The position numbers and the translations under genes were made by a program. A model generated the notes under the pieces. The model was not told the DNA's origin. It was given only the letters and a program-made list of their open reading frames with translations, and searched no databases. This document shows, one piece after another, positions 6,201 through 9,200 of a stretch of DNA of 64,000 nucleotides; within the stretch, counting starts at the first letter, position 1, and each line of letters begins with the position of its first letter. The stretch comes from Macrostomum lignano (Eukaryota). The stretch is from NCBI GenBank assembly GCA_002269645.1, contig NIVC01000306.1:62001-126000 (forward strand), given 5' to 3'.

Positions 6201-9200
6201 TGATTTGTAATTGACTCTTAATTTTCTTTTAAAAACTACAGTTTCGTCAAGGAACGGATTCAGTGCATTAGGACACATTTTATTCCAAATAGGGCTTTAG
6301 CACCAGTGGCGCCAGCACCAGGGGCGCCAGCACCAGGGGCGCCAGCACCAGGGGCGCCAGCACCAGGGGCGCCAGCACCAGGGGCGCCAGCACCAGGGGC
6401 GCCAGCACCAGGGGCGCCAGCACCAGGGGCGCCAGCACCAGGGGCGCCAGCACCAGGGGCGCCAGCACCAGGGGCGCCAGCACCAGGGGCGCCAGCACCA
6501 GGGGCGCCAGCACCAGGGGCGCCAGCACCAGGGGCGCCAGCACCAGGGGCGCCAGCACCAGGGGCGCCAGCACCAGGGGCGCCAGCACCAGGGGCGCCAG
6601 CACCAGGGGCGCCAGCACCAGGGGCGCCAGCACCAGGGGCGCCAGCACCAGGGGCGCCAGCACCAGGGGCGCCAGCACCAGGGGCGCCAGCACCAGGGGC
6701 GCCAGCACCAGGGGCGCCAGCACCAGGGGCGCCAGCACCAGGGGCGCCAGCACCAGGGGCGCCAGCACCAGGGGCGCCAGCACCAGGGGCGCCAGCACCA
6801 GGGGCGCCAGCACCAGGGGCGCCAGCACCAGGGGCGCCAGCACCAGGGGCGCCAGCACCAGGGGCGCCAGCACCAGGGGCGCCAGCACCAGGGGCGCCAG
6901 CACCAGGGGCGCCAGCACCAGGGGCGCCAGCACCAGGGGCGCCAGCACCAGGGGCGCCAGCACCAGGGGCGCCAGCACCAGGGGCGCCAGCACCAGGGGC
7001 GCCAGCACCAGGGGCGCCAGCACCAGGGGCGCCAGCACCAGGGGCGCCAGCACCAGGGGCGCCAGCACCAGGGGCGCCAGCACCAGGGGCGCCAGCACCA
7101 GGGGCGCCAGCACCAGGGGCGCCAGCACCAGGGGCGCCAGCACCAGGGGCGCCAGCACCAGGGGCGCCAGCACCAGGGGCGCCAGCACCAGGGGCGCCAG
7201 CACCAGGGGCGCCAGCACCAGGGGCGCCAGCACCAGGGGCGCCAGCACCAGGGGCGCCAGCACCAGGGGCGCCAGCACCAGGGGCGCCAGCACCAGAGGC
7301 GCCAGCACTCACGCAGTCTCCGCATCCAGCTGAGCATCCGCCGGCAGCTGCCAGGCCTCCTGCAGCCGGAAGCGCAGAGAAAGGTCGCTCAGGACCTCCA
7401 ACACGTGGGCCTGTGAAAGGTCTTCAGAATTGGCATTTTCACTGGCTGGTACCGGGGTGTCCAACTCCGCCAGCAGCTGAGCGAGAAGATCTGAGAGGCC
7501 GCCAGTGCCAGCGATGATCAGCAGGGGGCAGCCGGTGACCCGCATGCTGGAGTTCAGGGAGGTCAGGCAGGTGCTGCAAGATCCGCCCACCAAAACACTG
7601 CAGAGTGGAACGGAGGTCATGGCGGGGTCCTCGGCTGTTGTTGAATCTGAAATTATTCAAACAACAGGTATTTTACAACAGGTATTGTACAACAGGTTAT
7701 TGTAAAACTCGACTGGCTGCACAACAGTTGTTAAAAGTCGTGCAGTTGGACGAATGGAAATATGGCACGTAAAACTATTTTTTTTACCTTGAACGCTGGC
7801 TCTTGACGCCGTCTTTGGTTCGGAGTCCCTGGCCCCGGCTGCCAATGTCGGCCAGTCCTTCAGCAGCGCCTCAAAGCGACTGCGGAACAGCCAGCTGGTG
7901 TCGGAGCGGCAGCAGTCGCAGCCGCGGTCTCGGTGCGCGCAGTCCACCAGCAGCAGGTGGTTGTGGTTCGGGTCCAGCGAGTTGGCGCTGCCGTCGCTGT
8001 CTCCATCGCTGGACGAATCGGATTTGTAGTGAGCCGGGTTGCAGCCCTGCGGGATTCCATGGTCCCTGGGTTGTTAGGCACAGCCAATCACAGCCCAGCC
8101 AATCACATCCCAGTCAATCACAGCCCAGCCAATGACAGCCCAGCCAATGACAGCCCAGCCACTCAGCTCAGCCAATCACAGCCCAGCCAATCACAGGGCA
8201 GCGAATCACAGCCCAGCCAATCCCAGCGCAGCCAATCACAACCCAGCCAACTACAGCTCAGCCAATCACAGCTCAGCCAATCACAGCGCAGCTTACAGCG
8301 AAGCTCTCAGATCGAAGACACTCCCGGCCGGCCGAGCGCCCCCAGCTGCAAACCCCAATCGCTCGGACACTGTCCGGGCCATAGGCGTCGCAGAAGTCCC
8401 TGGCCGCCTGGCCGGTTTTTCTGGCCAGACCGGAGCAGCAGTCGGTGACGATCCAGGCACCTGCGGTTCATTAGCATAATTTATGCATAATTAGCTCCAT
8501 AATTAGCGAGAGCACCGGATGAAGCTCACCTGAGCCAGCTGCCGTCTTCCACAGGCCCTTCTGCCAAGCCGCCTTGAAGGAGGCCTTGTCGCAGTCGCTG
8601 CCGTGCACGCTGAGCACCAGGGAGGGCCTGCTGAGGGCCCAGCAGCCCAGCAGCAGCTGCGAAATGTCTGCGTCTGAGCAGGTCTGGGCCACGCGGCAGA
8701 ACTGGGGAGTGGGGAGGGCGGATGTTGTTGCCATGGTGACAGGTACTCCGAGTAGGAATACAGCGACAGTGAGGGACTCGATTATGCACTGGTATCAAAA
8801 CACAGGCCATCACCTGGACGGGGTTGGTAACAGAAACTAATCTGAGGAGGGTTGCCATAGCAAGGTCGAGCATGGGCAAAAGTTCCACCATGAAAACGGA
8901 CATAAGAAGTGTACCGTAGCAACTGTCAGCAGTGTTGCCATAGCAACAGCAATAGTGTTGCCATAGCAACAGCAATTGTTTTGCCATAGCAACAGCAATT
9001 GTTTTGCCATAGCAACAGCACTGAAAAGTGTTGCCATAGCAACATAAATGAAAAGTGTTGCCATAGCAACAGCACTGAAAAGTGTTTCCATAGAAACAGC
9101 AATGGGAAGTGTTGCCATAGCAACAGCAATGAAAGTGTTGCTATAGCAACAGCAATGAATCTTGCAACAGGCACTCACCTGAGCGGTGTTTCCCAGGCCG

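What the first reader, a model, noticed from the sequence alone, without database searches (positions are those of the whole stretch)
8727..9150. Intronic minisatellite built from about 11 RFX X-boxes in the ankyrin-TRPM gene
Seen: five exact GTTGCCATAGCAAC and six close variants within about 420 bp. Established: GTTNCCATRGNAAC is the X-box bound by RFX/DAF-19 factors, which switch on ciliary and ciliated-sensory-neuron genes. Inference: tandem amplification has produced a homotypic RFX enhancer targeting this channel to ciliated cells. A 14-bp palindromic match is hard to get by chance, although one seed can be amplified neutrally.
Basis: partly seen in the sequence, partly recalled or inferred. 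Interest (0 to 1): 0.75.

Follow-up and report, generated by a model that had tools for sequence, protein, structure and literature searches.

The report
X-box minisatellite in a TRPM intron
A tandem array of near-perfect RFX-binding motifs (X-boxes) does fill one intron of a flatworm ankyrin-TRPM channel gene. It lies in DNA that is 47% minisatellites, and nothing yet shows it is more than one of those that happens to look like a binding site.

Summary
Window 8931-9159 is a 9-unit tandem array with a period of 23-27 bp. Each unit starts with GTTGCCATAGCAAC: 5 exact copies and 4 variants. Three decayed copies lie at 8727, 8851 and 8910. All of them sit in one 477-nt intron (8702-9178, minus strand) of a gene with ankyrin repeats and a TRPM SLOG domain. 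The best protein hit is Macrostomum lignano at 49-54% identity.

The motif is a textbook X-box. All strict matches in the 64 kb lie in this intron.

The enhancer reading is untested, and the context argues against treating the array as special:
- The window holds 71 tandem arrays covering 47% of its bases, and nearly every intron of this gene has one.
- Neighbouring arrays carry perfect ETS and CCAAT consensus sequences.
- A panel of 50 transcription-factor consensus sequences hits the 61 repeat units no more often than it hits shuffled units (4 vs 2.0, p=0.15).
- The site is intronic, not in the promoter.
- No orthologous locus could be obtained to test conservation.

The most likely reading is a neutral minisatellite that grew from a seed containing a palindrome. 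RFX could bind it, but whether that has any effect is unknown. X-box-bearing tandem repeats also occur in unrelated eukaryote-derived metagenome contigs.

The parts
8702..9178 (-). Intron (477 nt, phase 0) of the ankyrin-TRPM gene. It is almost entirely made of the repeat and its decayed copies.
   Evidence: GT at 9178/9177 and AG at 8703/8702 on the minus strand; the flanking reading frames join ...GLGNTAQ|FCRVAQT...
9179..9430 (-). Upstream coding exon (...ALDCAREAG...[17 protein letters not shown]). Its 5' boundary is approximate (candidate AG sites put the exon start anywhere from about 9422 to 9447).
   Evidence: part of the Pfam Ank/LSDAT_euk query
8530..8701 (-). Downstream coding exon ([35 protein letters not shown]...TAAGS), the start of the TRPM SLOG domain.
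   Evidence: LSDAT_euk 1.9e-21
8931..9159 (.). Core tandem array: 9 head-to-tail units of 23, 23, 23, 27, 27, 27, 27, 26 and 23 bp. Unit = GTTGCCATAGCAAC + AGCAAT(GAAA)AGT.
   Evidence: TRF period 27, 9.0 copies, 87% matches; unit table; sub-blocks of 23 and 27 bp
8934..8947 (.). Exact X-box unit GTTGCCATAGCAAC
8957..8970 (.). Exact X-box unit GTTGCCATAGCAAC
8980..8993 (.). Variant TTTGCCATAGCAAC (first G lost; fails the strict consensus)
9003..9016 (.). Variant TTTGCCATAGCAAC (same change as 8980, probably copied from it)
9030..9043 (.). Exact X-box unit GTTGCCATAGCAAC
9057..9070 (.). Exact X-box unit GTTGCCATAGCAAC
9084..9097 (.). Variant GTTTCCATAGAAAC. A symmetric double change (G4T + C11A) keeps the 6-bp hairpin. 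It fails GTNRCC..RGYAAC but fits GTHNYYATRRNAAC.
9111..9124 (.). Exact X-box unit GTTGCCATAGCAAC
9137..9150 (.). Variant GTTGCTATAGCAAC (C6T makes the 14-mer a perfect palindrome)
8851..8923 (.). Decayed array units, including GTTGCCATAGCAAG (8851-8864) and TGTACCGTAGCAAC (8910-8923)
8727..8740 (-). Isolated copy, 24-37 nt upstream of the 3' splice site. GTCACCATGGCAAC on the gene strand is a strict X-box.

Best explanation
It is an ordinary intronic minisatellite. A 23-27-bp unit was amplified by replication slippage or unequal exchange, and older copies decayed. This happened in a genome region where almost every intron and intergenic stretch has acquired its own tandem array. The unit is three GCAAC-type pentamers: GTTGC (inverted), GCAAC and GCAAT. 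The first two form a 14-bp quasi-palindrome that coincides with the RFX X-box consensus.

The array has no dedicated function. An RFX dimer would probably bind the units in vitro, but any effect on transcription would be incidental. The small hairpin that each unit can form may have helped slippage, and template switching within the hairpin may have produced the symmetric variants.

Shown: the anatomy, the repeat-rich context, and the lack of statistical excess of transcription-factor motifs among repeat units. Inferred: neutrality and the mutational mechanism.
For: - The window has 71 tandem arrays covering 46.6% of its bases. The TRPM gene's other introns hold arrays of 4, 12, 14, 3, 21, 31, 15 and 15 bp, and so on.
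- This array is among the smaller and lower-scoring ones (TRF score 241-276).
- A panel of 50 well-known transcription-factor consensus sequences hits 4 of 61 repeat units against 2.03 in shuffled units (p=0.15). For motifs of at least 16 bits the counts are 2 against 0.76 (p=0.17).
- Neighbouring arrays carry ACCGGAAGTG x10 (9477-9887) and AGCCAATCA x7 (8082-8283) and x17 (11676-12472).
- Older copies at 8727, 8851 and 8910 have been allowed to decay. Two tandem units have lost the first G.
- Conservation is not specific to the box. The box has 3/135 mismatches and the rest of the unit 8/94 (p=0.054). Variation in the spacer is concentrated at one polymorphic base and the A-run, while AGCA and T.G are invariant.
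- The double substitution in unit 9084 preserves the hairpin (-4.0 vs -5.4 kcal/mol) but breaks the strict RFX consensus at both half-sites.
- The position is intronic, about 1.7-2.1 kb downstream of the first in-frame ATG at 10849. Described X-boxes are promoter elements (PMC2375033, PMC10393296, PMC12660999).
- Rough expectation (inference): 1,464 bp of unit sequence x 2^-19 gives 0.003 strict X-boxes per window. A genome the size of M. lignano (0.76 Gb, PMC5730564) with roughly 10^5 arrays should then hold about ten such arrays by chance.
Against: - For this one motif the match is improbable (about 0.003 per window).
- The unit has the longest palindrome of 60 units tested. Units in general are not palindromic (mean arm 3.15 vs 3.00 in shuffles), so a bias toward palindromes in repeat birth does not explain it.
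- The box is 2-4 times less variable than the spacer.
- Two of the three independent variant types preserve or improve dyad symmetry.
- All four panel hits lie in arrays in the 5' 4.5 kb of this one gene. That could mean real promoter-type motifs were the seeds.
- Neutrality itself was not tested.
Confidence: 0.6

Rival explanations
1. RFX platform. The array is bound by RFX dimers in ciliated cells and acts as a homotypic intronic enhancer that drives or boosts expression of this ankyrin-TRPM channel there. It may have started from a single functional X-box that was then amplified.
For: - Five units match the strict consensus GTNRCC N2 RGYAAC and eight sites match the nematode-type consensus.
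- RFX DNA specificity is conserved across animals and fungi (PMC10530576).
- A planarian Rfx is tied to cilia modules whose promoters are enriched in the RFX motif (PMC12660999).
- Palindromic X-boxes are over-represented among true Drosophila targets (PMC2375033).
- The box is less variable than the spacer.
- A separate strict X-box sits at 8727-8740 in unique-looking sequence.
- The array lies within about 2 kb of the likely start codon.
- Minisatellites that act through repeated transcription-factor sites are known, for example MNS16A with GATA-1 sites (PMC5438627).
Against: - No binding, accessibility, expression or conservation data exist (searches found no orthologous locus).
- The site is intronic, not in the promoter.
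- Presence of an X-box alone is not predictive (PMC2375033).
- X-boxes are rare at subtype-specific ciliome genes (6% vs 62% for core genes, PMC10393296).
- The repeat-rich context and the non-significant panel test argue against singling this array out.
- Decayed and consensus-breaking copies are tolerated.
- The one recognisable ciliary gene in the window (PPP1R32) has no 2-nt-spacer X-box upstream, so X-box use cannot be calibrated here.
Confidence: 0.2
2. Copy of a dispersed repeat family. The unit belongs to a satellite or transposon-borne minisatellite family present at many sites in this genome, inserted or seeded here without relation to the gene.
For: - Some array families in the window are dispersed. 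58607-59076 and 61536-61806 share a unit in inverted orientation, and 6299-7308 and 23907-24422 share a 15-bp unit.
- X-box-bearing repeat families exist in other eukaryote-derived DNA. One is a 38-39-bp minisatellite on five contigs of a single metagenome. Another is a repeat of about 150 bp on many contigs.
Against: - No second copy of this unit exists in the 64 kb.
- There are no terminal inverted repeats or other transposon hallmarks around the array.
- Translated read-through of the array found nothing in 5.8 billion proteins.
- The source genome itself could not be searched.
Confidence: 0.1
3. Structure-based role. The self-complementary units act through nucleic-acid structure, either as hairpins in the pre-mRNA that affect splicing or yield small RNAs, or as DNA cruciforms, rather than through RFX.
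For: - The intron RNA folds far better than shuffles (-163.2 vs -123.8 +/- 6.3 kcal/mol, z=-6.3) because neighbouring units pair into 14-17-bp stems.
- Each unit forms a 6-bp hairpin as DNA.
- The double change in unit 9084 is compensatory, and the change in 9137 perfects the palindrome.
Against: - Strong folding follows automatically from repeating any palindrome.
- There is one compensatory event only. Quasi-palindrome template switching explains it without selection (established mechanism, my own knowledge).
- The other 59 arrays are not palindromic, yet they are equally abundant in introns.
Confidence: 0.05

Closest known systems
X-box promoter motif of RFX/DAF-19 target genes (C. elegans xbx genes, Drosophila Rfx targets, vertebrate RFX1-3 sites)
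   Same: The same 14-bp imperfect palindrome with a 2-nt spacer. Five units meet GTNRCC N0-3 RGYAAC (consensus as given in PMC10530576 and PMC2375033).
   Different: Known sites are single (occasionally paired), lie upstream of the ATG or TSS, and are conserved between species (PMC2375033). This is a 9-unit tandem array plus 3 decayed copies inside an intron. Its conservation is unknown, and the host gene is a channel rather than a core ciliome gene (PMC10393296).
Minisatellites or VNTRs whose units carry transcription-factor sites, for example MNS16A at TERT with GATA-1 sites (PMC5438627)
   Same: Tandem units of tens of bp, each offering one binding site, so copy number sets the number of sites.
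   Different: For MNS16A, activity that depends on copy number was measured. Here nothing functional is known, and the surrounding genome generates such arrays in large numbers.
The other intronic and intergenic minisatellites of this window (Macrostomum-type repeat-rich genome; simple and tandem repeats are 15% of the M. lignano assembly, PMC5730564)
   Same: Same size class, same location in introns, same degree of decay. Neighbours likewise contain perfect ETS and CCAAT consensus sequences.
   Different: This is the only unit with a long palindrome (6-bp arms, the top of 60 units), and it matches the most information-rich motif of the panel (19 bits).
X-box-bearing tandem and dispersed repeats in metagenome contigs (L043 and related contigs with 38-39-bp units, up to 12.7 copies; a repeat family of about 150 bp in L008, L010, L013, L026, L033)
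   Same: GTTGCCATGGCAAC or GTTGCCATAGCAAC recurs as the best-kept block of a tandemly repeated unit.
   Different: The organisms are unrelated and unidentified, the unit lengths and flanks differ, and there is no sequence relationship beyond the box. These contigs were selected for having two exact boxes, so the apparent conservation of the box is partly built into the selection.

Membership tests
RFX/DAF-19 X-box target site | Sequence matches the X-box consensus (GTNRCC N0-3 RGYAAC; nematode form GTHNYYATRRNAAC) | tested here: met
   6 strict matches (0.18 expected) and 8 sites for the nematode form, all in this intron
RFX/DAF-19 X-box target site | Located in the promoter, upstream of the start codon or TSS (screens use 1-3 kb upstream of the ATG; PMC2375033) | tested here: not met
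   Lies in an intron between two coding exons, about 1.7-2.1 kb downstream of the first in-frame ATG at 10849
RFX/DAF-19 X-box target site | Sequence and position conserved in orthologues (the predictive criterion in PMC2375033) | not testable with these tools
   The only relative is a M. lignano protein at 49-54% identity with no DNA on record. The array read-through search was empty.
RFX/DAF-19 X-box target site | RFX occupancy and RFX-dependent expression of the gene | not testable with these tools
   Needs ChIP or CUT&Tag, RNAi or a reporter
RFX/DAF-19 X-box target site | Host gene belongs to the ciliome | tested here: inconclusive
   The gene is an ankyrin + TRPM SLOG channel. No ciliary link could be established. 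X-boxes favour core over subtype-specific ciliome genes (PMC10393296).
Minisatellite / VNTR | Head-to-tail units of about 10-100 bp with variants between units | tested here: met
   9 units of 23-27 bp, 87% matches, two sub-blocks
Minisatellite / VNTR | Copy number varies between individuals | not testable with these tools
   A single sequence only
Homotypic cluster of binding sites acting as an enhancer | Three or more sites for one factor within a few hundred bp | tested here: met
   6-10 consensus or near-consensus sites in 424 bp
Homotypic cluster of binding sites acting as an enhancer | Open chromatin and enhancer activity in the relevant cells | not testable with these tools
   No functional data
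Dispersed or transposon-borne satellite family | Further copies of the unit at other loci | tested here: not met
   None in the 64 kb.
Dispersed or transposon-borne satellite family | Terminal repeats or other transposon hallmarks flanking the array | tested here: not met
   The only inverted repeats found are the unit palindromes themselves

The most novel reading that the evidence does not exclude
In this flatworm genome, minisatellites in the 5' parts of genes are built by amplifying genuine high-affinity promoter-type transcription-factor sites. In this gene these would be RFX X-box x9-11, ETS ACCGGAAGTG x10, and NF-Y CCAAT x7 and x17, all within 4.5 kb. Tandem amplification would then be a regular route to homotypic regulatory platforms, and this array would make the ankyrin-TRPM channel an RFX target in ciliated sensory cells. 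The recurrence of X-box-centred tandem repeats in unrelated animal-derived metagenome contigs would be the same phenomenon elsewhere.
Probability: 0.1. Interest if true: 0.65.

Novelty: new member of a known kind. Interest (0 to 1): 0.3.

Why it matters
If the array is neutral, it is a clean cautionary example. In a genome that produces minisatellites in bulk, even a 19-bit binding-site match repeated ten times is within what chance plus amplification delivers. Motif arrays must therefore be judged against the local repeat background.

If RFX does use the array, it would be a directly testable case of a cis-regulatory element created by tandem amplification. It would sit in a relative of a flatworm for which transgenesis exists (PMC5730564), and it would link a TRPM-type channel to the ciliated-cell programme.

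Tried and rejected
1. A general bias toward palindromes in minisatellite units. Tested on 60 units: mean inverted-repeat arm 3.15 vs 3.00 in shuffles, and only 2 units at p<=0.05. Rejected; this unit is an outlier.
2. Known structured RNA. Rfam found nothing at gathering threshold in the whole window.
3. Orthologous or homeologous locus. Three protein searches returned only M. lignano A0A1I8... at 49-54% identity plus one weak ankyrin hit. Its encoding contig is not on record. Conservation is therefore untestable.
4. Finding other copies of the array through its translated read-through: nothing.
5. Transposon hallmarks around the array: none.
6. Relationship to other arrays in the window: none. 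The X-box-like CTGGCCCAGCAAC array at 37191-38103 is unrelated.
7. Box-specific conservation within the array: a trend only (p about 0.05). The cells are not independent, and the spacer's variation sits at very few positions.
8. Using the window's ciliary gene (PPP1R32, 48791-49585) as an internal control for promoter X-boxes. It has no upstream X-box, only a 0-spacer match inside its ORF. With one gene this is uninformative.
9. Gene context of the metagenome X-box pairs. The contigs are a heterogeneous mix: some look bacterial (GC-rich, long ORFs) and some carry long ORFs that look like reverse transcriptase. These are my readings, not tested. No clear association with ciliary genes could be read from raw ORFs; not pursued.
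Full report
**What is in the sequence**

Between 8727 and 9150 there are five exact copies of GTTGCCATAGCAAC, at 8934, 8957, 9030, 9057 and 9111. There are six close variants, at 8727, 8851, 8980, 9003, 9084 and 9137, and a seventh, more decayed copy at 8910.

TRF reports 8931-9159 as an array of 9.0 copies with period 27 and 87% matches. Cutting the array at the boxes gives nine head-to-tail units of 23, 23, 23, 27, 27, 27, 27, 26 and 23 bp. Each unit is the 14-mer followed by AGCAAT(GAAA)AGT. The units fall into a 23-bp sub-block and a 27-bp sub-block.

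The unit is effectively three GCAAC-type pentamers: GTTGC inverted, then GCAAC, then GCAAT.

The non-tandem part of the intron (8706-8930) still aligns to the unit at 8726-8742 and 8851-8923, better than shuffles do (p=0.005). The intron therefore holds a younger core and older decayed copies.

**Where it is**

The minus strand carries a gene. Its exons translate to ankyrin repeats followed by the N-terminal SLOG domain of TRPM channels. Pfam gives LSDAT_euk at 1.9e-21 and Ank_2 at 5e-7.

- The array lies in a 477-nt phase-0 intron. GT is at 9178/9177 and AG at 8703/8702, between ...[17 protein letters not shown] and [14 protein letters not shown]....
- The first in-frame ATG of the ankyrin exon is at 10849. 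The array is therefore about 1.7-2.1 kb downstream of the likely start and in at least the third intron (inference).
- The only informative protein relative in 5.8 billion sequences is a Macrostomum lignano protein at 49-54% identity. The source is therefore a macrostomid-like flatworm; the species is not determined.

**Is the motif an X-box?**

Yes. Five units and the minus-strand reading of 8727-8740 (GTCACCATGGCAAC) satisfy GTNRCCNNRGYAAC. These are the only six strict matches in the 64 kb, against 0.18 expected. Eight sites satisfy the nematode-type GTHNYYATRRNAAC.

The consensus and its recognition by an RFX dimer are as given in PMC10530576, which also states that RFX DNA specificity is conserved across animals and fungi. 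A planarian Rfx is connected to cilia gene modules whose promoters are enriched for the motif (PMC12660999). A flatworm RFX binding these units in vitro is therefore a reasonable expectation (inference).

**Is it more than chance?**

The ten or so copies are one seed multiplied, so the question is whether a repeat unit carrying an X-box is surprising.

The window is extraordinarily rich in tandem repeats. It has 71 separate arrays covering 46.6% of its bases, and almost every intron of this gene has its own array.

For this one motif, the 1,464 bp of distinct unit sequence give about 0.003 expected strict matches (1,464 x 2^-19, inference). A reader, however, recognises many motifs. I wrote down 50 well-known transcription-factor consensus sequences from memory and scored all 61 units with periods of 10-70 bp against them:
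- 4 unit-motif matches against 2.03 in shuffled units (p=0.15).
- For motifs of at least 16 bits, 2 against 0.76 (p=0.17).

The other hits are instructive:
- The next intron upstream holds a 31-bp array with the ETS consensus ACCGGAAGTG ten times (9477-9887).
- An intron two further downstream holds a 15-bp array with the CCAAT box AGCCAATCA seven times.
- A 49-bp array upstream of the gene holds the same CCAAT box 17 times.

Scaled to a genome of M. lignano size (0.76 Gb; simple and tandem repeats 15%, PMC5730564), roughly ten arrays with a strict X-box unit are expected by chance (rough inference).

**Points against pure chance**

- The unit has the longest palindrome of 60 units tested (6-bp arms). 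Units in general are not palindromic (mean arm 3.15 vs 3.00 in shuffles). A general preference for palindromes in array birth does not explain it.
- The box is less variable than the rest of the unit: 5/126 deviating cells by eye, and 3/135 vs 8/94 in a wrap-around alignment (p=0.054). The cells are not independent, though. The spacer's variation sits at one polymorphic base and the A-run, while AGCA and T.G are as invariant as the box.
- Two of the three independent variant types respect dyad symmetry. Unit 9084 has G4T together with C11A; given one change, the chance that a second is its complementary partner is 1/39 (inference). Unit 9137 has C6T, which makes the 14-mer a perfect palindrome.
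- The double change keeps the 6-bp hairpin (-4.0 vs -5.4 kcal/mol) but breaks the strict RFX consensus at both half-sites. It points to DNA or RNA symmetry, for example template switching in quasi-palindromes (a known mutational mechanism, my own knowledge), at least as much as to RFX selection.
- All four panel hits lie in 7 arrays between 8.0 and 12.6 kb, and none in the other 54. This is a post hoc observation, biased by where I looked hardest. I record it but do not build on it.

**Comparison with known X-boxes**

- Described X-boxes are promoter elements. Drosophila screens use 1-3 kb upstream of the ATG. [quoted passage not shown] The combined X-box and FKH-8 signature is present in 62% of core but 6% of subtype-specific ciliome genes (PMC10393296).
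- The present site is intronic, in a channel gene.
- Its conservation could not be tested. No orthologous DNA was obtainable, and a search with the translated read-through of the array found nothing.
- The window contains one recognisable ciliary gene, PPP1R32 (48791-49585, Pfam 6.7e-48). It has no 2-nt-spacer X-box upstream, only GTTGCCGGCAAC inside its ORF. One gene cannot calibrate anything.

**Related sequences elsewhere**

A scan of metagenome contigs for two X-boxes 5-30 bp apart found 73 contigs.
- In 46 of them the pair lies inside a TRF array.
- Five contigs of one 'plant metagenome' carry a 38-39-bp minisatellite centred on GGTTGCCATGGCAACC, with up to 12.7 copies (L043, L039, L060, L061, L067).
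- Many contigs with Ga0056*/Ga0209* names carry a repeat of about 150 bp in which the box recurs once per unit (L033's TRF array is 71% matching).
- The same pattern occurs only 6 times in 596 Gb of bacterial and archaeal genomes.

X-box-centred tandem repeats are therefore a recurring feature of eukaryote-derived DNA, and at least some belong to multi-copy families. This fits repeats that happen to carry, or exploit, the palindrome. It does not show function, and the contigs were selected for having exact boxes.

Within the window, the unit has no second locus and no relative among the other arrays. No transposon hallmarks flank it. Other array families in the window are dispersed.

**Structure**

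Because each unit is self-complementary, the intron RNA folds far better than shuffles (-163.2 vs -123.8 +/- 6.3 kcal/mol, z=-6.3), with neighbouring units pairing into 14-17-bp stems. This follows automatically from repeating a palindrome, so I give a structural role low weight. Rfam finds nothing in the window.

**Verdict**

- Neutral minisatellite that grew from a seed containing a GCAAC inverted repeat, and that RFX might bind incidentally: 0.6.
- Real RFX-dependent regulatory platform: 0.2.
- Copy of a dispersed repeat family: 0.1.
- Structure-based role: 0.05.

It is a new member of a known kind: an intronic minisatellite whose unit contains a transcription-factor site. The decisive tests are a genome-wide count of X-box-unit arrays against control palindromes, comparison of this intron between relatives, RFX occupancy, and a reporter with and without the array.

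Noticed in passing
window 1-64000: 46.6% of the window is tandem repeats, in 71 separate arrays with periods from 3 to 451 bp. Nearly every intron and intergenic stretch has its own array. This is about three times the 15% reported for the M. lignano assembly as a whole (PMC5730564).
   Followed up: partly
window 9448-9891 (ACCGGAAGTG at 9477-9887, minus strand): The intron upstream of the X-box intron is filled by a 31-bp minisatellite. Its unit contains the top-affinity ETS consensus ACCGGAAGTG, ten exact copies against 0.11 expected.
   Followed up: partly
window 8081-8292 and 11669-12508: Two further arrays of the same gene region carry the NF-Y CCAAT box AGCCAATCA. One has a 15-bp unit (7 copies, plus strand) and the other a 49-bp unit (17 copies, minus strand, upstream of the likely start codon). 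All four hits of my 50-motif panel fall in arrays between 8.0 and 12.6 kb. This is a post hoc pattern.
   Followed up: partly
window 58607-59076 and 61536-61806: The same 23/24-bp unit (CTCAGAATGGCGCCTAATCTATG) forms two arrays in inverted orientation. They flank about 2.4 kb that includes the first zinc-finger exon of a nuclear-receptor gene (61059-61319).
   Followed up: no
window 6299-7308 and 23907-24422 (also 23659-23895): Related 15-bp units (AGCACCAGGGGCGCC and GCACCAGGGGTGCCC) form large arrays at loci 17 kb apart, in different genes. At least some minisatellite families are therefore dispersed.
   Followed up: no
window 37191-38103: A 28-bp array with about 33 copies carries CTGGCCCAGCAAC in 29 units. 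This is an X-box-like site with a 1-nt spacer and one mismatch. It is unrelated to the finding's unit.
   Followed up: partly
window 48791-49585 (+), site at 49064: An ORF matches PPP1R32, which I know as a cilium-associated protein (Pfam 6.7e-48). It contains a 0-spacer X-box, GTTGCCGGCAAC, inside the coding sequence and has no X-box upstream.
   Followed up: partly
window 9084-9097 and 9137-9150: Unit 9084 carries a symmetric double substitution (G4T + C11A) that keeps the hairpin. Unit 9137 carries C6T, which makes the box a perfect palindrome. The pattern suggests templated correction within quasi-palindromes or selection for dyad symmetry.
   Followed up: partly
L008, L010, L013, L026, L033, L047, L051 and others (metagenome contigs Ga0056*/Ga0209*): A repeat family of about 150 bp (also about 300 bp) in which GTTGCCATGGCAAC recurs once per unit, while the rest of the unit is diverged (71% matches in L033's array). 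It resembles a satellite with a conserved protein-binding box. The organism is unidentified. Box conservation is partly forced by how I cut the units.
   Followed up: partly
L039, L043, L060, L061, L067 (ENA UOVY01 'plant metagenome'): A 38-39-bp minisatellite family centred on GGTTGCCATGGCAACC, with up to 12.7 copies, on five low-coverage contigs. It is the closest analogue of the window's array in another organism. The box is less variable than the rest in L061 and L067 (p=0.01 and 0.002; cells are not independent).
   Followed up: partly
L074-L079 (bacterial genomes), L037 and L066 (GC-rich metagenome contigs): Six prokaryote genomes, including two Myceligenerans species, hold two GTTGCCATGGCAAC palindromes within 30 bp of each other. 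L037 and L066 look bacterial from their GC content and long ORFs (my reading). Organisms without RFX can thus also duplicate this palindrome, presumably as operator-type sites.
   Followed up: no
window 33379-39501 (-), 46593-47075 (-), 61059-61531 (+): Other genes in the window: a BTB/Kelch-like gene whose introns hold arrays of 12 bp (451-bp higher order), 28 bp and 23 bp; a PB1-domain (TFG-like) exon; and a nuclear-receptor DNA-binding domain. These were read from ORF translations only.
   Followed up: no
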